From Camelus dromedarius (taxonomy: Eukaryota), in assembly GCF_036321535.1 (NCBI RefSeq), contig NC_087447.1, forward strand, positions 28,458,001 to 28,522,000: a DNA stretch of 64,000 bases. The letters are read 5' to 3'. The translations under genes were made by a program, and so were the position numbers. How positions within the stretch are numbered: position 1 is the stretch's first letter; each line of letters starts with the position of its first letter. Positions 11,461 through 63,338 of the stretch are shown here, piece by piece. The notes beneath the pieces are model-generated. The model made no database searches, had not been told where the DNA came from, and saw only the letters and a list, made by a program, of their open reading frames with translations.

Positions 11461-11974
11461 ATGTCCTGCGGATTTTTTATTGGCAGAAGAACGCTTTCCT
11501 CCACACTATAAAGTCCCATATTTACATGCTTTAGAGCATTTCAATATTTGAAACGTCATAGTTTCTCTCTTTCTTCAATGCCAGGCTGTCATTTTAAGCA
11601 GTTATCAGCATGTCCCACATTCACGTTCACTTATAATTCTCTGATCCTAATTTTCTGTAAGCTAATAAAGCAGACATGTAATCATTATAATCATTTCTAA
11701 AGTAAAATGAATTTGAAAGAAGTCCTCGAGGGAATTTCTTGGGATCAAAATGTTTTAGTAGCATGAGTGGGTCCTATGACACCCATTTTGACCATTCAGA
11801 GGTCTTTTTTTTTTTTTTTTTTTTTTTACTTCTTTTCTTGTTTTGGGTGGTGTTCTAGATCAGAGAAGCTAACAACCAGTAATTTTTGGATAAGACATAA
11901 ATGAATTACCATATGCTTAATAAAACTTCATGGGATTGTTCTGGAAATTTTCAGATTCATCTTAGGTAGGTCTG

Positions 11975-18000: not shown

Positions 18001-18274
18001 GCAAAATCGAACAACACCTCCTACTATACATGGTCACTTAAAACACACACACACACACATTTTCACTTCAAGTGTTAAATACTTGCTTCATCTCTGAGCT
18101 CTTCTGCCACTGCTACTACCAAGACTCAATAAATGCTCTTCCTTTCACAACGAATAACTACGTACAAAAGGCTTTTACATTCACCATATCACTTAATCGT
18201 CAAAAAAAAAAAAAAAAAATCCTGAGGTCTATCTTGTCACCCTGTTTTACGTATTGGAAGAGTAAATGTTTATT

Positions 18275-20306: not shown

Positions 20307-21559
20307 CTCATGAGGACTGGCCGAAAAGGATCCAGGAGGCTAACTGAATGTGGGTGTAGTTACTAGGTATGTATTCATGCAGCAGGAACTCTGTCCATGG
20401 CATAAGAGAATGGAACCAAGATACCTGCCAACACAGAGGCAAGCCTCAGGGCCCTTGTCCACTGGATAGTGTGTAATGAGGGGCTCCTCAGTGCAACCAA
20501 CCAGAGTTAAGAAAAGAGGACACAGGCAGAAATCTTATTCTATGATGAAACTGGGCAAAGAGGACAAGTATGAGGCTGTTGCATCCCTACCATCACTTGG
20601 ACACTCAGATCCTAAGCCCGGTGAGTAGAAAGGGGAATGGGAACAGAGTGGAGGAAACACCATATGATCCAAAGTGTGATACATGACATAATGCCAAGAT
20701 TTACTCCACTCAAAGGATAAGTGCAATGTGAACAACATCATTATTCACTCTCTTTTTCATTTGATCGACTCAGGAACTAGGAGCCATGTGTGAGACAATT
20801 TGAAGCAGTGAGCAGGCATAGGTAGAAGGAAAAAACAGAGATTGACATAATCCATCTTAACGCCTAAGGCAAGACATTCCATAGTCTCTCTCTCCTCCTG
20901 AGATATTCTGAATCTGAAGAATTTTTCAATAAGAAAGCCCATAATATCCAGCCTTCAAACATTTTAATGCATCAAGAAGAACTGATTTGGGAAATTATTC
21001 ATGGTAAGTTTTGCATGAGAATTAATACAAAGCAGTATAATATAATAATACAATTAATATAAAACAATATAAAACTAGAGAAGGAAACAAATCTCAAAAT
21101 CCCAGTAGACCACAAGCTAATGAGATCTAGCCATTGGTTTCTATGGCACAAAAAAGAAAACTAAATGGCAAAAAAAAAAAAAAAAAAGTCAAAGCTCATG
21201 CTTATCTTATTCAATGCTCTATTATCAGCCCTGCCAATAGTGATGAATTTATAGTGAATGAAGGGAGTCTGGCCTTGTATATGCAGGACACCAGCCTAAC
21301 GCTGTCAGAAGTTCTGTTCACCAAGGGTAACAGATGCTGTGTTCCCTTTTAGGAGGGAAACCTTTCTGCATGCCTGATCACCTGACTCTTTGCCGGCCTG
21401 TCCTTTCCACGAGCGTCTCCTTCTTCCACTGCATCTTATAACCTGACCTCATTAGAGAACTACATCCAGTTGGGCCCCAAATTAGGAAGAAAAGCATTAA
21501 ACAATCTCAGATGCTCAAAGCTGATCAAGGACAAGAACAATATGAAAAAGAAGGACATA

Positions 21560-31789: not shown

Positions 31790-32285
31790 ATCATTATTAT
31801 CCTCACAAAAGCTAACATCTATTGAGTGTTAATGTTTGTTACACACCAGGCAGTGTACTGAGAAATTTCCCTTCATTAATTGTCTTGTTCACTCTTTACA
31901 ACAACCCCAAAAAACAGGAACTGATATTACCCCCATTTTATAGATGAGAAGCTGAAGTCTTGGGAGCTTGAAGTAGCTTACCCACGGTCAGCCTGCTAGG
32001 ACACAGTGGAGTTTAGAGTTCAAACAGAGGTTTGTCTCTGACTGCAAAGCAGTTACACTTTTTTTTTTTTTTTTTTAATTGAAGTGTAGTTGATTTACAA
32101 CGTTAGTTTCAGGTGTACAGCAAAGCGATTTAGTTACACACATACATACATATATTTTTTCTTTTCAGATTATTTTCCATTATATCTTATTACAAGAAAT
32201 TGAATATAATTCCCTGTGCTATACAGTAGGTCCTTGTTGTTTATCTATTTGTCTTACTCTTAAACATTACCTATGCTACCTCTCA
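31790..32285 (-). mobile_element. MIR SINE split by an L1 insertion
   Basis: cccccattttatagatgagaagctgaag...tctgactgcaaagc [L1] ttactcttaaacattacctatgct. Confidence 0.8.
32059..32250 (-). mobile_element. 5'-truncated cetartiodactyl-type L1 3' end
   Basis: T18 tail, then aattgaagtgtagttgatttacaacgttagtttcaggtgtacagc...ttccctgtgctatacagtagg; same 3' UTR type as the L1 at 46360. Confidence 0.9.
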
Positions 32286-36728: not shown

Positions 36729-37113
36729 NNNNNNNNNNNNNNNNNNNNNNNNNNNNNNNNNNNNNNNNNNNNNNNNNNNNNNNNNNNNNNNNNNNNNNNN
36801 NNNNNNNNNNNNNNNNNNNNNNNNNNNNNNNNNNNNNNNNNNNNNNNNNNNNNNNNNNNNNNNNNNNNNNNNNNNNNNNNNNNNNNNNNNNNNNNNNNNN
36901 NNNNNNNNNNNNNNNNNNNNNNNNNNNNNNNNNNNNNNNNNNNNNNNNNNNNNNNNNNNNNNNNNNNNNNNNNNNNNNNNNNNNNNNNNNNNNNNNNNNN
37001 NNNNNNNNNNNNNNNNNNNNNNNNNNNNNNNNNNNNNNNNNNNNNNNNNNNNNNNNNNNNNNNNNNNNNNNNNNNNNNNNNNNNNNNNNNNNNNNNNNNN
37101 NNNNNNNNNNNNN
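36729..37113. other. N run (385 nt), content unknown
   Basis: seen directly; flanks not recognisable as L1. Confidence 0.99.
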
Positions 37114-38344
37114 AGGCTAAGGTGATGGGATAAAGCCCATGCACTTCATTCACACAGGAATGTTCCTGGGCTCACATTTGGAGTCAATTTACTTATATTT
37201 TAGGCAAAACTTTAGAGAGATGATGGTCTACTTTCCCAGTTCAAGGTATCCTGGAGGCAGCAGGTCACCAGGGAGACACACACTGGCAGCATGAAAAAGT
37301 GAAAGCTGGCAGCCCAAGAGTTGATGAAGATGGAAAAACTCTGAAAAGTTGATACCAGAACCCTAATATAGAGCTCTGCACTCAACAGGCTCTATTACAG
37401 CCTGTTAGAATAATTTATGATTGAGTCAGAAAGACAAGATCGAATTAGAATGTTCTATTTAATAAAGCAAGGAAATATATATACATTTTCAAAGATGTTC
37501 ACCAAAAATAGTTTAAATGAACCTATTTTTATACATATGAACCTTGTAACCAGAACAACTCATTTCCTTAATATTCTAGATGGAAAGTTAACATTTTACT
37601 GTACATTGGTTATGTCCTAATTTCAATCTCAAACTACCTGCCCCTCACTGACCAGGGAGACACATTCAGGAAGCACAATGTCATTATGCTAATACTGCCC
37701 TAAGCTTAACAAAATTAGGTAAATGTGCTGCCACCACCCCCAAAATAGAATCACACATTGCTACCCCAGCCCCAAATATATGACTCCAGAGTTATCTATG
37801 CCCCTGCCTGCTGCCAGTCATAACCAATATATTTTAGTGTATGTGCTGATCAAGTTTAAATCTGATTTTAGCAGACCACTTAAGAAGACATCCCTCTAGC
37901 ATTTTGTGATTCAATTTATCTTTGAATCCCTTGAGTCAGAATCTCAAGAAATCACATCACTTGAACCTTGAAGAGAAAGACAACAGATTGACTGGGACCT
38001 AGAAGATGGAGCAAGAACCTACAGAAATAAGATTTTGCACGAGTCTTTTCACAAACATTAACAGTGGAAAAATCAGGGTCACCAAAGCCAGAGCAAACTA
38101 GAGATAAGAATGCTGTACTAATGGTCAAGGTTTCTAGACACCATCAATATTGAAGTGAGAGTGAAAAGGAATAAAAGAAGACAAAAGATAAGTGTACAAA
38201 CACCAGGAATCACCATCCACTTGGGGACAGCATGCCAAATTTTTTAGCACAGTGTCAAGGAGGAAAGAACCCCACAGAGAAAAGGTTTGCAAGGTCATTC
38301 ATAAAGACTCATGGGCAGTGCTATAGGTTGGAGAAAGGGGGTGT

Positions 38345-38850
38345 TTCAGACAGGATAATGCTATAGTGAACAACTTCCACAGTTCAAAGCTTAAAACAAC
38401 AAAGGTCTCTTTCTTTCTCATGACACATGTCCACGTCCACGGTGGGTCAGCTGGGGCTCTGCTCTATGTTGCCTGCTCTCCTCACCCTAGGATCTCGGCT
38501 AACAAACCAGCTGTTATCTGGTCATTACAGTTTATAGTGACAGAAGGAAGGAGAGGAAGTAGTAAAGCATGTGTTGACTTCTAGGACCTCTACCTGGATG
38601 ACATTTTGGAGGGAGGGAGGTAATTACGATTTTTAAAAAATTTTATTTAATTTTTATTTTTTAAATTAATTAAAAAAATTTTCAATGGAGGTATTGGGGA
38701 CTGAACCCAGGACCTTGTGCATGCTAAGCATGCACTTTACCAGTGAGGTAGACCCTCCCCTCCCCTGACGACTTTTAAGGGAGTAGGAAGTACAACCGTC
38801 CTGCAGAGGGGCTTCCAATATTGATGCACTGGATTGTGGTCACTGGAGGC
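38345..38850 (-). mobile_element. MLT1J-like LTR split by a SINE
   Basis: ttaaaacaacaaaggt...ggtcagctggggctctgctc; resumes aagggagtaggaagtacaa after the SINE. Confidence 0.7.
38637..38765 (-). mobile_element. tRNA-Ala-derived camelid SINE (Vic-1 type)
   Basis: reverse complement GGGGAGGG...GTAAAGTGCATGCTTAGCATGCACAAGGTCCTGGGTTCAGTCCCCAATACCTCCA plus AT-rich tail; TSD ACGATTTTTAA (38626-36) / ACGACTTTTAA (38768-78). Confidence 0.9.
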
Positions 38851-38886
38851 AGTTGGGTAAAAAAAGACAAGCTGTCCACCAGAGAT

Positions 38887-39430
38887 CAGGGGTCTTCACA
38901 CTTGAGCATACGTAAGAACCCTGTGGAGGGTTTATTAAAACACAGCTTCCTGTGCCCCAGCCCCAACCGTCCTAATTCAGAGATCCTGGGTGGAGCCCAA
39001 GAACGTGCCTTTCTTTTCATACAGGCACGCCTCGTTTTGTGCTTTGCTTTACCGCACTTCCCAGAGTCTACATTTTTTACAGATTGAAGGTTTGTGGCAA
39101 CCCTGCCCAAGCAGGTCTATCAGGACCATTTCTCCAACAGCATTTGCTCACCTCACAGCTCTGTCATGTTTTGGTAATTCTCGGTAATTCCTGCAATATT
39201 TCAAACTTTTCTATTATTATTCTATTTGTTGTGGTGATCTGCGATGAGTGATCTTTGATGCGACTATTACAAAAAGATTACATCCTGCTGAAGGCTCAGA
39301 TGATGGTCGGCATTGTTTTAGCAATAAAGCATTTTTAAATTAAAAAAAAAAAAAAAAGAATGTGCCGTTCTCACAAGCCCCTAGGCGATTCTGACGTTGC
39401 TGGTCCACGGACCATACTTCGAGTAGGACG
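38887..39430 (+). mobile_element. MER5A hAT-Charlie MITE split by a Tigger-derived insert
   Basis: acacttgagc...ggagggtttattaaaacacag...[insert]...acaagcccctaggcgattctgacgttgctggtccacggaccatac. Confidence 0.85.
39020..39357 (+). mobile_element. Internally deleted Tigger1 derivative (Tigger1a_Art-like) with 5' TIR, no 3' TIR and a poly(A) end
   Basis: TA+CAGGCACGCCTCG...TTTACAGATTGAAGGTTTGTGGCAACCCTG is the Tigger1 5' end; GCTGAAGGCTCAGATGATGG is from the 3' part; AATAAA 39323-28; A16 39342-57. Confidence 0.88.
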
Positions 39431-39810
39431 GATGCAGAGCCATTGCTGGGAAGCAGCTGCCCAGACATGTGTCCCAGCTTCACCCTTGCATCCAGGTGGG
39501 GCCAAATAACAAGTTCTCACCAAAGAAATATGAACAAAAACATGGTGTGTCACTTCTTGAATTAACGTGGTTAAAAAGCCTTTTTTCTCCCACTTCCTTC
39601 TTCCGTCTGTGTTCTCCATGTTGATGCCCGCGGCAATGTTACAGCTCATGTTTGAAGTTAAAGCCTTCATCAGCCTGAGCCACCTTCCCCCCACTGACAA
39701 GAAGCACCTGCATCAGATTACTGTGGGGAAAAGAATAAATTTCTATCATGTGAAACCACAAAATCTGGGGGTTTGTTTTTCACAGCAGGTCATATTACTT
39801 TAGCTAACAG
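39430..39810 (+). mobile_element. MLT1J-like MaLR LTR
   Basis: ggtggggcca...tgtgtcacttc...aataaatttctatcatgtgaaaccac...gggtttgtttttcacagcag. Confidence 0.7.
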
Positions 39811-40739
39811 GGGAATGGGAAGAGGGCAAGAGACTCTGGACCCCCTGCTCTATATTTGTCATTTTACTCTCCTTCAATTACGTGAGAAACCTCTTCTGCC
39901 TCCTTAACTTCTTCAAATGTCACCTCCTTTTGTCCCCCTTTACTGTATCTGTTTTCTTCTCAAACTCACTGTGGTAACAGATAAAATTAAATGGATTAGG
40001 ATTATGAGGTGGAAACACTCAGAATCATTTTAATTCCTGCCTAAGGTACTATCTATAATTTGCTTATTTATAGTTTATTCATTCATTTAACAAAGCCCAA
40101 CTCCATGCCTACTTATATATCTAAGACAATCCTGTTTCCAAAAACGGCATGAGTGTCGCCCCGGTCCCTCCCATAACCATGGTGGATATTGAAAATATAG
40201 AAGTGCTTTTTCTCACTGAGTCCTGAGGAAAAGCCTCCAAATCCTTTACAGCAGGGTGCTTCAAATAGCCACTACTAATAAATCCATAATGGTGGTTTTA
40301 CCATGAAGGGATAAAAAGCAATATGTATCCAAGTCATTTCTATTTCTATCACTTGTATCAATATATGGATTTTCCCAAAGATGTTGCAAGAAAGTTTGGT
40401 CTCCTGTGGTCACTCAATCTACTTCTAATATGTTTTCCTGAGTAATGGAAGCTGTAAAGGCCAAACTACATTTGCAGCTAAGTTTCCACATGGACTTAGG
40501 TTCCACCAAGCAGATATACCACACAAGACTTGAAATGCAGAACTCAGCACTGTGAGATAGCAGTCTTATATGAAGAGACTGGGCCTTCTGGCAGACACAA
40601 CTGCAGAAGTGTTTGGTTCTTCTAAGGCATTGTGAAGAAGGTTCTACAGGCCCGGATCTTGCATCAAAGTTATAGATCAACAGGTATCTGAGGCAGTCGA
40701 ATTTCTCTTAGCAAGTCCCTGGTATGGTTGAGCAATTCA

Positions 40740-44127: not shown

Positions 44128-44746
44128 CACTCCTGGGCATATATCCAGAAGGAACCCTAATTCAAAANNNNNNNNNNNNNNNNNNNNNNNNNNNNNNNNN
44201 NNNNNNNNNNNNNNNNNNNNNNNNNNNNNNNNNNNNNNNNNNNNNNNNNNNNNNNNNNNNNNNNNNNNNNNNNNNNNNNNNNNNNNNNNNNNNNNNNNNN
44301 NNNNNNNNNNNNNNNNNNNNNNNNNNNNNNNNNNNNNNNNNNNNNNNNNNNNNNNNNATTCTAAGTGAAGTAAGCCAGAAAGAGAAAGAAAAATACCATA
44401 TGATATCCCTCATATGTGGAATCTAAAGGAAAAAAAAGAAGACAAATGAACTTAAACATAAAACAGAAACAGACTCACAGACATAGAATACACACTTGTG
44501 GTTGCCAGAGGAAGGGGGTGGGAAAGGACAGACTGGGAGTTCAAGATTTATAGATACTGACAGGTATATATAGAATAGATAAACAAGCTTATACTGTATA
44601 GCATAGGGAAATATATACAAGATCTTGTAGTAGCTCACGGTGAAAAGAGTATGAAAACGAACATATGTATATTCATATATGACTGAAAAATTATGCTGTA
44701 CACCAGAAATTGACACACATTGTAAACTGACTATAACTCAATAAAA
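44128..44746 (+). mobile_element. Young 5'-truncated camelid-type L1 (ORF2 C-terminus plus 3' UTR)
   Basis: ctcctgggcatatatccag...[N190]...attctaagtgaagtaagccag...ctcaataaaaaaaa; TSD AAAAATAGAAAATT (44114-27) / AAAAATAGGAAATT (44747-60). Confidence 0.92.
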
Positions 44747-46359: not shown

Positions 46360-46798
46360 NNNNNNNNNNNNNNNNNNNNNNNNNNNNNNNNNNNNNNNNN
46401 NNNNNNNNNNNNNNNNNNNNNNNNNNNNNNNNNNNNNNNNNNNNNNNNNNNNNNNNNNNNNNNNNNNNNNNNNNNNNNNNNNNNNNNNNNNNATAATAGA
46501 TGCTGAACAGGGNNNNNNNNNNNNNNNNNNNNNNNNNNNNNNNNNNNNNNNNNNNNNNNNNNNNNNNNNNNNNNNNNNNNNNNNNNNNNNNNNNNNNNNN
46601 NNNNNNNNNNNNNNNNNNNNNNNNNNNNNNNNNNNNNNNNNNNNNNNNNNNNNNNNNNNNNNNCAAAAATTCTAATCTGAGAAGATATGTGCACCCCGAT
46701 GTTCATAGCAGCATTATTTACAATAGCCAAGACATGAAAACAACCCAGGTTCCAATCAATAGATGATTGGCTTAAGAAGATGCCACACACACACACAC

Positions 46799-47276: not shown

Positions 47277-47734
47277 GAAAAATGTGATCTTTGATAGTTG
47301 TCTAACATTATATGGATAATTTACTTATCCATCTCACTAATATACGAGATTATGTTGTTTCCAACTTTTCATTATCAAATAAATTAAATATGATTATTTC
47401 CATACAATATATTTCTGAAATGGAAATAGTAGGTTGATGGATGTGAAGAGAGTTAAGAAGGCAGGACATAAAGCCAGTGTAATGGAAAGAGAAAAGCTTG
47501 AAACAGAAACAGAGGTGGTTTTAGTTAGCATTGTTTATATAACTCAATTGGAAAGGATGGTATGCCAAGGCAGCAGGCTTTCATAAAATAGTTGCTCTGC
47601 ACTTCCAACAATCATTGGAAAATGGGAGCTTAGACTGAAGACTTGTAAAGCTACAGCAGGATTCTTTATAGTATGTGCCGTAGAACATCCACTGTGTGGG
47701 ATTTTAACAAGTGTTGTATTAAAGAAGTGGTGTG

Positions 47735-47890
47735 GGTGGGGGTGGGTATGGCTCAGGGGTAGAGTGTGTGCTTAGCATGTACAAGTTCCTGGGTTCAATC
47801 CTGGGTACCTCCATTAAAAAAAAAAAACTAATAATAAGTAAATAAATAGACCTAGTTACCTCCTTCCCCAAAAACAAACAAACAAACAAA
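47735..47890 (+). mobile_element. tRNA-Ala-derived camelid SINE (Vic-1 type, long tail)
   Basis: GGGTATGGCTCAGGGGTAGAGTGTGTGCTTAGCATGTACAAGTTCCTGGGTTCAATCCTGGGTACCTCCA plus A-rich/(AAAC)n tail; degenerate TSD 47721-34 / 47891-904 (11/14). Confidence 0.92.
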
Positions 47891-51755: not shown

Positions 51756-51791
<36 letters not shown>

Positions 51792-57535: not shown

Positions 57536-58489
57536 GTTGGACAAGATTAAATAGGTTAAGGTCACATAAGCTGCTGAGTGAAAAAGAAAAGGGTTGATTT
57601 CAAGGATGAAAACAACAGCAGAAGCTCAGGATGTGTGGGGAGCTAAAAGTGAAGTATATGGCTGAATTTCCTTCTTCTTTAAGGCTGAATAATATTCCAT
57701 TGTATGTATATATGTATATACTATTTTGTCTTTATCTGTCAATGGACATTAGGGTTGCTTTCAACTCTTGGAACTTAACAAATAATGCTTCAATAAATAT
57801 GGGTGTGAAAATATCTTTTCAAGATCCTGTTTTCAATTCTTTTAGATACAGAATCAGAAGTGATTTTGCTGGATCATATGATAATTCTATTTTTAATTTT
57901 TTGAGGAACTTCCATACTGTTTTCCATAGCACTGCACCATCTTACCTTCCCATTNNNNNNNNNNNNNNNNNNNNNNNNNNNNNNNNNNNNNNNNNNNNNN
58001 NNNNNNNNNNNNNNNNNNNNNNNNNNNNNNNNNNNNNNNNNNNNNNNNNNNNNNNNNNNNNNNNNNNNNNNNNNNNNNNNNNNNNNNNNNNNNNNNNNNN
58101 NNNNNNNNNNNNNNGCTTGTTGGCCATTTGTTTATCTCCTCTGGAGAAACATCCATTTAAGTCCCTTGCCTATTTTTTAATCAGGTTGNNNNNNNNNNNN
58201 NNNNNNNNNNNNNNNNNNNNNNNNNNNNNNNNNNNNNNNNNNNNNNNNNNNNNNNNNNNNNNNNNNNNNNNNNNNNNNNNNNNNNNNNNNNNNNNNNNNN
58301 NNNNNNNNNNNNNNNNNNNNNNNGCATAGACGTTTTTAAGTTTGATGTGATCTCACTGGTCAGTTTCCACTTTTGTTGTCTGTGCTTTTGTGTCATATTC
58401 AATAAATCATTACCAAATTCAATATCATGAAGCTTTTTTCCTATGTTTTCTTCTAGGAGTTTTATAGTTTCAGGTCTTACATTCAGATT

Positions 58490-61400
58490 TGTCTTTGTCC
58501 ATTCAGGCTGCTGTTACAAAATACCTTAGACTGGGTGACTGATAAATAACAGAAATGTATTTCTTATAGTTCTGGAGAATGAAAAGTTCAAGGTCAAAGC
58601 ACTGGCAAATTTGGTGTTCAGTGAGAGTCAACTTCCTGGTTCATAGACCGCTGTCCTCACATGGCAGAAGGAGCGAGGGGGCGCTAAGGAGTTTTTTTTA
58701 TAAGAGCATTAATCTCATGCATGAGGGTTCCATTTTCATGACCTAATCATCTCCCAAAGGTCCCACCTCTAAATATCATCACTTTGGGGATTTGTTTTCA
58801 ATGTAAGAATTTTGCAGAAACATAAACATTCAGTTTTTAACACTGGCCCCCCAAATTCATGTACTTCTCACAGGTAAAATACATTCATTAATCCCAGAAG
58901 CCCCCAAAGTCTTAACTTATTCCAGCATCAACTCAAAAATCTAAAGTCCAAAGTCTAATCTAAATTTCATATAAATCAGATATGGGTGAGACTCAAGGTA
59001 CGATTCATCCTGAGGCAAATTCCTTTCCAACTGTGAATCTGTGAAACAAAACACGTTATGTGTTTCCAAAATACAGTTGTGGTAAAGGCAGAGAATATAT
59101 ATTCACATTTCAAAGGGGAGAAATATGAAAGAAAGAAATGACAGGTCTCAGATAATTCCAAAACCTAACAGGGAAAATTCCATTAGATCCTATGTCTCAA
59201 GAACAGTACCCTTTGGCTCATTGCTCTACCTTCGAGACTCATGGGGGTAGCAATGTTACCCCCAAGGCTTGGCAAGATAGCCCCACAGCAGGTCTCTGCT
59301 AAGGCCCACTGCAGTGGTTCTTTTAGGTCAGAACTGAAAGCCCATGGCTCTGGGCAGCTCCATCCTTTGAAACCTAAGCAGAGGCAGCCATGTCCCTGGA
59401 CCCATGTACTCTGAGGGCTGCAGAGATGGCACCACACAGATGCTGCCAAAATTTGCTGCCTGCACCGTGCTGCACTGGGGTCGAGCACAGCAGCACCTGG
59501 GGTGGCTGAAGAGCATGGCGCTGGAGAGCCCTTCATGTGAAGTAGTACTGATGGCAAGGGCTGAGGCTCTGCAAATGCCAAGAATCTTCCCTTTGAAACT
59601 GCCCTGCCTTCTGGGCTTGTGATGGGAGTGGTAGATCTGATGATCTCTGAATTGCCTTCAGGGTCATTCCTCCAGGGTCTTAGAGAATAACTCCTGGCTT
59701 CTGTTGAGATGGCTGATCTCTACCTATTTCATTAAACTGTCTCTTGGTCACACCCTTAGTGTTTCATTTTTTACAATATGGAGAGGCTGAGAATTTAAGT
59801 TCTACTTACTGTTTGTTTGACAATTCCATCTTTAAGTCAGTTCTCTCTTCTCAAATTTTACTATAAGCAGTTAGATGTGCCAAGCCATAGCTTCAATACT
59901 TTGCTTAGAAATAGTTTTAGCTTTAGCTGAATTGGATATTTATATCCAATTTCATTACTTGAAAGTTCCACCTTCCACGAAACACTAACATGACACAATT
60001 CAGCCAAGTTCCTTGTCACTTTATAATAAGGATGACCTTTCCTCCAGTTTCCAATAACATGTTGCTCATTTCCATCTAAGACCTCATCAGAATGGCTTTT
60101 ACTATCCATATTTCTACTAACATTCAGTTCAAGATTATTTAGGTAATCTAAAAAGATTGAGTATTTTTCTGTGGTTCTTTTTTTCTTTCTGGGCTCCCAC
60201 ACGAGTCACCCTTAATGGTCTGTTCATGATAATGTTGGCTTTTTCTAGCATGCACTTTGAAAATCTTCCAGCCTTTACCCATTAACCAGCTCTAAAGCCA
60301 CTTCCCCATTTTTAGGTATTTGTTAAAGAAGCACTGCACTTCTTTTTTTTTTTTTTTTAACATTTTTATTGATTTATAGCAATTTTACAATGCTGTGCCA
60401 AATTCCAGTGTACAGCATAATTTTTCAGTTACACATGAACATATATATATTCATTGTTACATTTTTTTCTCTGTGAGCTACCATAAGATCTTGTATATAT
60501 TTCCCTGTGCTGTACAGTATAATCTTGTTTATCTACTCTACATTTTGAAATCCCAGTCTATCCCTTCCCACCCGCTGCCCCCTTGGGAACCACAAGTTTG
60601 TATTCTATGTCTAAGAGTCTATTTCTGTTTTGTATTTATGTTTTGTTTGTTTGTTTGTTTGTTTGTTTTTAATTTTAAATTCCACATATGAGCGATCTCA
60701 TATGGTATTTTTCTTTCTCTTTCTGGCTTACTTCACTTAGAATGACATTCTCCAGGGCCATCCATGTTGCTGCAAATNNNNNNNNNNNNNNNNNNNNNNN
60801 NNNNNNNNNNNNNNNNNNNNNNNNNNNNNNNNNNNNNNNNNNNNNNNNNNNNNNNNNNNNNNNNNNNNNNNNNNNNNNNNNNNNNNNNNNNNNNNNNNNN
60901 NNNNNNNNNNNNNNNNNNNNNNNNNNNNNNNNNTTTTGGAGTAGGGTTCCTTTTGGATATATGCCCAGGAGCAGGCATATGGTAANNNNNNNNNNNNNNN
61001 NNNNNNNNNNNNNNNNNNNNNNNNNNNNNNNNNNNNNNNNNNNNNNNNNNNNNNNNNNNNNNNNNNNNNNNNNNNNNNNNNNNNNNNNNNNNNNNNNNNN
61101 NNNNNNNNNNNNNNNNNNNNNNNNNNNNNNNNNNNNNNNNNNNNNNNNNNNNNNNNNNNNNNNNNNNNNNNNNNNNNNNNNNNNNNNNNNNNNNNNNNNN
61201 NNNNNNNNNNNNNNNNNNNNNNNNNNNNNNNNNNNNNNNNNNNNNNNNNNNNNNNNNNNNNNTACTGTAACAGAGTACCACAGGTGGGTGGCTTTTATAA
61301 ACAACAGAAATTTACTTCTCACCATTCTGGAGGTTGGGAAATCTAAGATCAAGGTGCCAGCAGATCTGGTGTCTGGTCAAAGTCAGCCAACTACCTGGCT

Positions 61401-62800: not shown

Positions 62801-63338
62801 TTAGGGCTCACTCTGGAGCTCATCTCTTCTCATTTGGAAAAACTGTCCCAAAGGCTCCCCAGAAAAGTAGGACTGGAACTGCAGGGGCTCCTCATACCTT
62901 TGGGGCTGAGATGAGAAACCCGGATTGGGCTCCATTATGGAGCAGGTGTTCTTCACTTTCTGGAAGGCCTGTGCCAGGCCAAGGCCTTGGTGCTACAATA
63001 GGTGGGTAGTACATAAGACATTGGAGCAACTGTCATCTTTCTTACAGTAGACAAGGCAGGTTGCACCCAGTGCACACTGCAGCCTTCATGGTGGCTAAGG
63101 TGGGCTCCACGAGAACTAGCAGATCCTTGGCTGGTCATCAAACCCTGGCATTCCAAGGTCAGCTACACCCAGGTGGTCAGGGCCAGGCTGCTAGCATGAG
63201 ACACTGATGCAGCAGCTCTGTCATGGTCACTGAGCATAAGTTCCTGGAAAATAGCAAAAGGACTATGTGAGCCAATGACAATGGTACAGGTAGGGAGGCC
63301 CCAGTGGCCTCCCAGCAACAGGTTTTTTCCAGGTCCAT
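62801..63338 (-). pseudogene. DUSP28: Processed pseudogene of dual-specificity phosphatase 28
   Basis: manual minus-strand translation across frameshifts: ATG 63338; QPGP...GVADL.MP.FDD / PAKDLL..VEPT.A.MKAAV / CLVYCKKDDSCS..LCT..LL*HQGLGLAQAFQKVK...EPNPGFSSQ.Q.YEE.LQ.QS..GEP; about 40/69 identical to human DUSP28 as recalled (CLVYCK to GEP); in-frame stops, at least 3 frameshifts, no intron. Confidence 0.9.

What the first reader, a model, noticed from the sequence alone, without database searches (positions are those of the whole stretch)
38999..39371. A DNA transposon (Tigger1 derivative) that appears to have been copied through RNA
Seen directly: the element starts at TA plus the 5' TIR (39020), lacks the 3' TIR, and stops 13 nt after AATAAA (39323-28) in an A16 tail (39342-57). 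It is flanked by a 16-bp direct repeat, AAGAACGTGCCTTTCT (38999-39014) / AAGAATGTGCCGTTCT (39356-39371), 14/16 identical with one difference a CpG transition. The repeat duplicates host MER5A sequence. Established: Tc1/mariner elements make TA duplications and need both TIRs, whereas poly(A) plus a 7-20 bp TSD is the signature of L1 target-primed reverse transcription. Inference: a polyadenylated MITE transcript, ending at the transposon's own poly(A) signal, was retroposed by L1. If many copies share this end, it would be a SINE-like family born from a DNA transposon. Caveat: the left junction lies next to the MER5A TA dinucleotide, so ordinary insertion followed by local rearrangement is possible.
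Basis: partly seen in the sequence, partly recalled or inferred. Interest (0 to 1): 0.7.

Follow-up and report, generated by a model that had tools for sequence, protein, structure and literature searches.

The report
Camel Tigger transposon piece copied via RNA
A 343-base piece of an old cut-and-paste DNA transposon in the dromedary genome carries all the marks of having been copied through RNA by the LINE-1 machinery; it is a clean example, but this kind of event ("retro-DNA") has already been described in primates.

Summary
A 16-nt direct repeat, 14/16 identical, lies at 38999-39014 and 39356-39371. It brackets TTTCA, then TA, then a transposon terminus (CAGGCACGCCTCG...) at 39022. The body has AATAAA at 39323-28 and a pure A16 tail starting 13 nt later. 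There is no 3' inverted repeat anywhere in the 64-kb window.

The flanking repeat is not chance: 3 of 20,000 shuffles reach it, and none of the other 12 long homopolymer runs in the window has such a repeat. Removing the insert and one repeat copy restores a continuous MER5A-like palindrome.

T4 to T6 runs on the sense strand rule out a Pol III transcript. The best reading (about 0.8) is that a Pol II transcript entered the element from 7 nt of upstream flank. It was cleaved at the element's own poly(A) signal and was inserted by L1 target-primed reverse transcription.

This is not new in kind. Tang and Liang (PMC11195612) describe 748 such retro-DNA events in primates, with Tigger1 the largest subfamily.

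The Tigger1 label rests on a remembered consensus only.

The scan's notes hold no such case on other DNA of this genome.

The parts
38905..38998 (.). Host MER5A-like repeat: left arm and centre of its palindrome, up to the target site
   Evidence: The Rfam mir-1289 model matches 38928-39021 on the minus strand over its full length (26.6 bits, E 0.004, below the gathering score of 66). That microRNA lies wholly inside MER5A in human (PMC4482582, Table 2). Positions 38905-38962 align as the reverse complement of the right arm.
38999..39014 (+). Left copy of the target-site duplication, AAGAACGTGCCTTTCT
   Evidence: It is host-repeat sequence, part of the right palindrome arm.
39015..39021 (+). 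TTTCA plus TA: seven bases that belong neither to the host repeat nor to the transposon. Most likely they are the flank of the source copy, and the TA is that copy's own insertion duplication.
   Evidence: Read directly. They do not continue the host repeat, which resumes with CACAAGCCC after the right repeat copy. Their origin is inferred.
39022..39341 (+). Body of the retrocopy (320 nt): transposon 5' terminus CAGGCACGCCTCG..., an internally deleted element, ending at the cleavage site
   Evidence: Read directly. It is unique in the window. The Tigger1/MER2-type label comes from a remembered consensus only.
39035..39038 (+). First of three sense-strand T runs (T4 here, T6 at 39073-78, T4 at 39169-72) that would stop RNA polymerase III
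   Evidence: Read directly. That runs of four or more T's terminate Pol III is established knowledge.
39323..39328 (+). AATAAA poly(A) signal of the element, 13 nt before the tail
   Evidence: The use of Tigger poly(A) sites by host transcripts is shown in PMC10901741.
39342..39357 (+). Pure A16 tail (its last two A's are shared with the right repeat copy)
39356..39371 (+). Right copy of the target-site duplication, AAGAATGTGCCGTTCT
39372..39401 (.). Host MER5A-like repeat resumes (CACAAGCCCCTAGGCGATTCTGACG...)
   Evidence: The palindrome alignment runs without a break across the joined 39014|39372.

Best explanation
This is a one-off retrocopy of a DNA-transposon fossil, a 'retro-DNA'. Somewhere else in the genome sat an internally deleted Tigger1-type element inserted at a TA.

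The proposed steps are:
1. An RNA polymerase II transcript coming from upstream ran into that element in the sense direction.
2. The transcript was cleaved and polyadenylated about 13 nt after the element's own AATAAA, so the last part of the element, with its 3' inverted repeat, was never in the RNA.
3. LINE-1 endonuclease nicked the bottom strand of a MER5A-like repeat at TTCTT|GG.
4. The T-rich end primed on the poly(A) tail and the RNA was reverse transcribed up to a point 7 nt upstream of the transposon terminus.
5. Second-strand repair duplicated 16 nt of the target.

What the sequence shows directly: the structure, the non-random duplication, the continuity of the host repeat and the absence of the 3' TIR. 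What is inferred: the RNA intermediate, L1 as the enzyme, and the source-flank origin of TTTCATA.
For: - The 14/16 flanking repeat has a chance probability of about 2e-4, and none of the other 12 long homopolymer tails in the window has one.
- A pure A16 tail starts 13 nt after AATAAA.
- There is no 3' TIR in 64 kb.
- The host palindrome is restored when the insert and one repeat copy are removed. The alignment score is 16, against 8.7 +/- 1.5 for shuffles.
- The host repeat is supported by a sub-threshold match to the MER5A-derived mir-1289 model (PMC4482582).
- Sense-strand T4 to T6 runs exclude a Pol III transcript.
- The stretch is held by 20 runs from 10 studies.
- Precedent: 748 retro-DNA events in primates, with long TSDs, poly(A) tails and the TT/AAAA site. 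Tigger1 is the largest subfamily there, and consensus region ~1840-2240 is one of two over-used regions.
- Tigger poly(A) sites can end host transcripts.
Against: - No orthologous empty site, parent copy or sibling copy could be examined.
- The nick site matches the L1 consensus TTTT|AA only on its T-rich side.
- A 5' end only 7 nt outside the terminus is a coincidence if truncation was random.
- One of 500 shuffles reached the palindrome score, so that test is moderate.
- The Tigger1 identity, and hence the claim that the signal is the transposon's own, rests on memory of the consensus.
Confidence: 0.8

Rival explanations
1. This copy is a member or founder of a SINE-like, L1-driven family. 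Many poly(A)-ended copies of this same truncated Tigger derivative would exist in camelids, sharing the TTTCATA leader and diagnostic mutations.
For: The copy keeps an intact 5' end and a working-looking poly(A) signal, so a daughter could in principle be transcribed and copied again. Tang and Liang suggest that some retro-DNAs can act as parents. The pure A16 tail suggests a fairly recent event.
Against: - There is no second copy in the 64-kb window.
- The element cannot be a Pol III unit, because of its T4 to T6 runs, and no promoter is evident. The RNA started outside the element.
- In primates retro-DNAs number under 200 per genome and are mostly single events without a hotspot.
- The scan's notes on 533 windows of this genome hold no similar case. 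This is weak evidence.
Confidence: 0.07
2. The element arrived by ordinary cut-and-paste insertion at a TA of the MER5A. Later DNA-level damage deleted the 3' part, expanded an A run and duplicated the flank locally.
For: From memory, the MER5A consensus has a TA close to this point. The left junction does read TA followed by the terminus.
Against: - The TA is separated from the host sequence by TTTCA, which is not host sequence.
- At that position the local host copy reads TC, not TA, in the right repeat copy.
- The scenario needs a 6-nt insertion, a deletion ending at exactly a normal cleavage distance from AATAAA, a new A16 run, and a 16-nt duplication placed precisely at both ends (p about 2e-4 by chance).
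Confidence: 0.05
3. The mechanism is the same L1 copying, but the RNA was not a transposon transcript in any sense. It was either the 5'-truncated tail of a host mRNA whose 3' UTR ends in this element, or an orphan 3' transduction from an L1 or SINE lying upstream of the source copy.
For: The copy includes 7 nt of foreign flank, so the RNA came from outside the element. About half of primate parent sites lie in genes. Tigger poly(A) sites end host transcripts when SAFB proteins are depleted.
Against: Nothing argues against it. It is a more specific version of the best explanation and is counted within its 0.8. The two differ only in the identity of the upstream promoter, which this window cannot show.
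Confidence: 0.5

Closest known systems
Retro-DNAs of primates (Tang and Liang, bioRxiv 2020; F1000Research 2023-24, PMC11195612)
   Same: Both are a piece of a dead DNA transposon with a long TSD, a poly(A) tail, no pair of TIRs and an L1-type insertion site. TcMar-Tigger is the second largest family among them and Tigger1 the largest subfamily (41 events). The mean Tigger retro-DNA length of 251 nt is close to the 343 nt seen here.
   Different: This case is in a camel, not a primate. It keeps one complete TIR plus 7 nt of source flank. It has a 16-nt TSD, whereas their TSD lengths peak at 8 nt. It ends at the transposon's own AATAAA, a point that paper does not discuss; it argues for no clear hotspot. 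Their definition also required lineage-specific presence/absence, which was not testable here.
Processed pseudogenes and orphan L1 3' transductions
   Same: All involve trans-mobilisation of a polyadenylated Pol II RNA by L1 ORF2p, with 5' truncation, an A tail and a 7-20 nt TSD.
   Different: The RNA copied here is non-coding transposon sequence, and its 3' end was set by a transposon's poly(A) signal. No upstream exon or L1 sequence is left to name the promoter.
Tigger poly(A) sites acting as gene traps (Nature 2024, PMC10901741)
   Same: Sense-oriented Tigger elements carry a poly(A) site that can end a host transcript. This is the step proposed here for the source locus.
   Different: That work concerns full-length coding Tiggers in human cells depleted of SAFB. 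It shows RNA processing, not retroposition.
Canonical Tigger1-derived deletion elements (MER2 type)
   Same: They share the TA plus CAGG... terminus and the internally deleted body (from memory of the consensus).
   Different: Canonical copies have both TIRs and a 2-nt TA duplication. This one has one TIR, an A tail and a 16-nt duplication.

Membership tests
L1-mediated retrocopy (TPRT product; 'retro-DNA') | Target-site duplication of about 7-20 nt flanking the whole insert | tested here: met
   The repeat is 16 nt and 14/16 identical. Three of 20,000 shuffles reach it, and it is the only such repeat among 13 homopolymer tails.
L1-mediated retrocopy (TPRT product; 'retro-DNA') | 3' poly(A) tail placed 10-30 nt after a poly(A) signal | tested here: met
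   A16 at 39342-57 lies 13 nt after AATAAA at 39323-28.
L1-mediated retrocopy (TPRT product; 'retro-DNA') | Insertion at an L1 endonuclease site (bottom strand TTTT|AA) | tested here: inconclusive
   The bottom strand reads TTCTT|GG. The priming side is T-rich, but the other side is GG, not AA. The nick position is uncertain by 2 nt because the TSD starts with AA.
L1-mediated retrocopy (TPRT product; 'retro-DNA') | Absence of the transposon's pair of TIRs and of a 2-nt TA duplication at the new site | tested here: met
   There is no inverted copy of the terminus in 64 kb. The right junction is A tail plus host repeat, with no TIR or TA.
L1-mediated retrocopy (TPRT product; 'retro-DNA') | Empty pre-integration site in a related genome and a parent copy elsewhere | not testable with these tools
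The only indirect support is that the host palindrome becomes continuous after removal.
Tigger1 / MER2-type (pogo, TcMar-Tigger) non-autonomous element | Collinear similarity to the Tigger1 consensus ends, with the poly(A) signal on the transposase sense strand | not testable with these tools
There is no repeat library and no second copy in the window, and no paper holds the k-mers.
Tigger1 / MER2-type (pogo, TcMar-Tigger) non-autonomous element | Both TIRs present and a TA target duplication (canonical cut-and-paste copy) | tested here: not met
   Only the 5' terminus is present, and the duplication is 16 nt. The copy derives from such an element but did not arrive by its mechanism.
SINE (Pol III-transcribed, LINE-dependent family) | Internal Pol III promoter and a body free of Pol III terminators | tested here: not met
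   There are sense-strand T4, T6 and T4 runs at 39035-38, 39073-78 and 39169-72. No tRNA, 7SL or 5S match appeared in the Rfam scan of 38700-39700.
SINE (Pol III-transcribed, LINE-dependent family) | Many copies with the same ends and different TSDs | not testable with these tools
   Only one copy lies in the 64-kb window. A genome-wide count was not possible.
MER5A (hAT-Charlie MITE) as the host of the insertion | Similarity to MER5A and its palindromic build | tested here: inconclusive
   The mir-1289 model, which is MER5A-derived in human (PMC4482582), matches over its full length but below threshold, at 26.6 of 66 bits and E 0.004. The internal palindrome gives z of about 4.8, though 1 of 500 shuffles equals it.

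The most novel reading that the evidence does not exclude
The copy belongs to a camelid-specific family of poly(A)-tailed, L1-driven elements born from a Tigger1 deletion derivative. Its members would share the TTTCATA leader and end at the transposon's own poly(A) site. A dead DNA transposon would thus have become a self-perpetuating retroposon that uses its own RNA-processing signal.
Probability: 0.07. Interest if true: 0.6.

Novelty: new member of a known kind. Interest (0 to 1): 0.22.

Why it matters
The copy is a tidy textbook example of how L1 can give a second life to the fossil of a DNA transposon. It also shows that a Tigger-type element's own poly(A) signal can set the 3' end of the RNA that gets copied. 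It extends a class so far catalogued only in primates to a camelid. Because it has an A tail, a 16-nt duplication and a retained source flank, the parent locus should be easy to find in the full genome. It does not open a new question. Its value is as a marker for camelid phylogeny by presence or absence, and as one data point for how often transposon poly(A) sites feed L1 retroposition.

Tried and rejected
The call was counted and the cap is one, so there are no read-level data: no depth test for a family and no empty-site joints.
- The look-up of sequencing runs listed only near-identical holders under organism labels A and B. No more distant camelid was listed, so no cross-species test was possible.
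- Six ORFs around or next to the site, and two inside or overlapping the insert, were looked up as a route to orthologous contigs. None is in the protein collection. I ran no further search on non-coding ORFs.
- The window has no convincing gene within 10 kb of the site. The large ORFs mostly overlap N-masked stretches, so the look-up of encoding contigs could not reach an orthologous locus.
- Paper searches for the terminus and for internal k-mers found nothing relevant. Smit and Riggs 1996 (PMC39958) is not held. A search for Tigger1a_Art and similar names found nothing useful.
- I left out a scan of metagenome or viral contigs for Tigger-type patterns. Any hit would most likely be host contamination of unknown species, possibly human, which I am told not to save or compare.
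- The sigma-70 promoter and terminator scan is irrelevant to a mammalian element and was ignored.
- Other Rfam matches inside the insert (sno_ncR3, MIR841, RsmY, Dictyostelium class I) are far below threshold and fall on the low-complexity A/T run. I rejected them as chance.
- A splice-acceptor reading of TTTCATACAG|G was considered and rejected. The copy keeps the bases upstream of the AG, so the RNA was not spliced there.

Full report
**What is in the sequence.**
- AAGAACGTGCCTTTCT lies at 38999-39014 and AAGAATGTGCCGTTCT at 39356-39371. They agree at 14 of 16 positions. One difference is a CpG to TpG transition and the other is T/G.
- Between the two repeats lie TTTCA (39015-19), TA (39020-21) and a 320-nt body that opens with CAGGCACGCCTCGTTTTG (39022).
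- The body contains AATAAA at 39323-28 and ends 13 nt later in sixteen uninterrupted A's (39342-57). The last two A's overlap the right repeat.
- The window is mammalian. An earlier follow-up note of this scan names the genome as dromedary; I did not check that independently.

**Is it more than chance?**
- A match of 14/16 or better to the right 16-mer within the 600 nt upstream arose in 3 of 20,000 shuffles, and the analytic expectation is about 2e-4. The rest of the 64-kb window holds no other such match.
- As a control on the method, I looked for a flanking repeat of 13/15 or better within 7 kb at all 13 homopolymer runs of 12 nt or more in the window. Only this tail has one.
- The structure is real DNA. 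Twenty public runs from ten studies, under two organism labels, hold 0.98 of the 182 sampled 31-mers of 38300-40100. A run lacking the 343-nt insert would miss about a fifth of them.

**The host site.** After the right repeat the sequence continues CACAAGCCCCTAGGCGATTCTGACG.
- I joined 39014 directly to 39372 and aligned the result with the reverse complement of 38840-38985. The alignment runs unbroken through the joint, pairing 38988-39014 plus 39372-39401 with 38962-38905. The score is 16, against 8.7 +/- 1.5 for shuffles, although one of 500 shuffles equalled it. The duplicated 16-mer is therefore part of one arm of a palindromic host repeat, and removing the insert with one repeat copy restores that arm.
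- The Rfam model of mir-1289 matches 38928-39021 on the minus strand over its whole length, at 26.6 bits and E 0.004. That is well below the gathering score of 66. It still fits a MER5A relic, because human mir-1289-1 lies 100% inside MER5A (PMC4482582, Table 2).
- TTTCA does not continue the host repeat. It is neither host nor transposon.

**What is missing.**
- No inverted copy of the 18-nt terminus exists anywhere in the window at up to three mismatches.
- The repeat finder on 38700-39700 shows no inverted arm for it.
- blastn of the whole insert against the window finds only the insert itself.

The element therefore has one end of a cut-and-paste transposon, and an A tail where the other end should be.

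**Mechanism.**
- The set of features is the signature of L1 target-primed reverse transcription of a polyadenylated Pol II RNA (established knowledge, restated in PMC11195612). Those features are the long duplication, the A tail, the cut at a normal distance after AATAAA, and the loss of everything beyond that cut.
- Three runs of four to six T's on the sense strand (39035-38, 39073-78, 39169-72) would stop Pol III within 14 nt of the terminus. The RNA was therefore a Pol II product, and the element cannot be a conventional SINE.
- The bottom strand at the target reads TTCTT|GG. Its T-rich 3' end can prime on poly(A), but the match to the L1 consensus TTTT|AA is only partial.
- The copy begins 7 nt outside the transposon terminus, and those bases include a TA. 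The simplest reading is that they are the flank and TA duplication of the source copy. The RNA then entered the element from upstream, as host-gene read-through, another promoter, or an L1/SINE read-through. It did not start at the element's own promoter. This step is inference, because the parent locus could not be sought.
- Ilik et al. (PMC10901741) show that sense-oriented Tigger elements carry a poly(A) site able to end host transcripts. That supports the proposed 3'-end step.

Ordinary TA insertion with later rearrangement would need four things: a 6-nt insertion at the left junction, a 3' deletion ending at a normal cleavage distance from AATAAA, a new A16 run, and a precisely placed 16-nt duplication. 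I give it about 0.05.

**Comparison with what is known.**
- Tang and Liang (bioRxiv 2020; F1000Research, PMC11195612) named such elements retro-DNAs. They report 1,750 entries, representing 748 events, in ten primates.
- Those events have TSDs of 8 nt or more, no TIRs, poly(A) tails in 23.5%, and a weak TT/AAAA site motif.
- TcMar-Tigger contributes 221 events with a mean length of 251 nt. Tigger1 is the largest subfamily, with 41 events.
- Their coverage plot shows consensus region ~1840-2240 as one of two regions (with ~1310-1440) used more often than the rest. From my memory of a 2.4-kb consensus, whose poly(A) site lies about 180 nt from the 3' end, that upper bound would coincide with the poly(A) site. 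This is an untested inference, and the authors themselves argue for no clear hotspot.
- The camel copy therefore belongs to a known kind. It differs in host lineage, in keeping one complete terminus with source flank, in a longer TSD than their modal 8 nt, and in plainly ending at the element's own signal.

**The family idea.** It could not be tested. Several things argue against it, all weakly:
- there is a single copy in 64 kb;
- there is no Pol III promoter and no evident own promoter;
- primate retro-DNAs number under 200 per genome;
- the scan's notes on 533 windows of this genome hold no similar case.

I put the family idea at about 0.07.

**Age.** Two differences in 16 nt and a still-pure A16 tail suggest an insertion much younger than the eutherian-wide activity of Tigger1, but the confidence interval is very wide. 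CpG observed/expected is 0.54 in both the insert and the host repeat, which does not help. The insert is present in every run listed, under both organism labels.

**Limits.**
No repeat library, second copy or paper text was available to test it.
I worked beside them and sent none of their letters to any search tool afterwards.
- I did not scan metagenome collections for Tigger patterns, since hits might be human contamination.
- N-masked stretches were left alone.

**Verdict.** The event is an ordinary though unusually clean member of a described class, so interest is low to moderate.

Noticed in passing
window 38928-39021 (minus strand): The Rfam mir-1289 microRNA precursor model gives a full-length but sub-threshold match (26.6 bits, E 0.004) on the palindromic centre of the MER5A-like host repeat. 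The retrocopy landed in one arm of that hairpin, so any hairpin-forming potential of this MER5A copy is now split.
   Followed up: partly
window 38702-38774 and 47725-47797: A 73-nt stretch just upstream of the host repeat matches an inverted copy 9 kb away at 78% identity. It is probably two copies of a SINE-type repeat. The first copy lies next to the places that read laying would not lay (38628-38683).
   Followed up: no
window 11805-11827, 18202-18219, 21170-21187, 32059-32076, 51759-51789, 60343-60358: Six further pure A or T runs of 16-31 nt are presumably tails of other retroposed inserts. None gave a flanking repeat of 13/15 or better in a simple scan, so their limits remain undefined.
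   Followed up: partly
window 36729-37113, 44168-44357, 46360-46663, 57955-58323, 60778-61262: There are eight N runs, 1,587 N in all. Several of the longest mechanical ORFs of the window run across them and are therefore artefacts of masking.
   Followed up: no
window 62801-63338: Another first-reader note (s1-191729) places a DUSP28 retrocopy here. That would be a second L1-mediated retrocopy of a Pol II transcript in the same 64 kb. I did not examine it.
   Followed up: no
window 39015-39024: The junction TTTCATACAG|G reads like a good 3' splice acceptor (pyrimidine tract followed by CAG). Tigger termini placed after a T-rich flank could supply cryptic acceptors just upstream of their poly(A) site, which fits the gene-trap behaviour reported in PMC10901741. 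This is speculation and was not tested.
   Followed up: no
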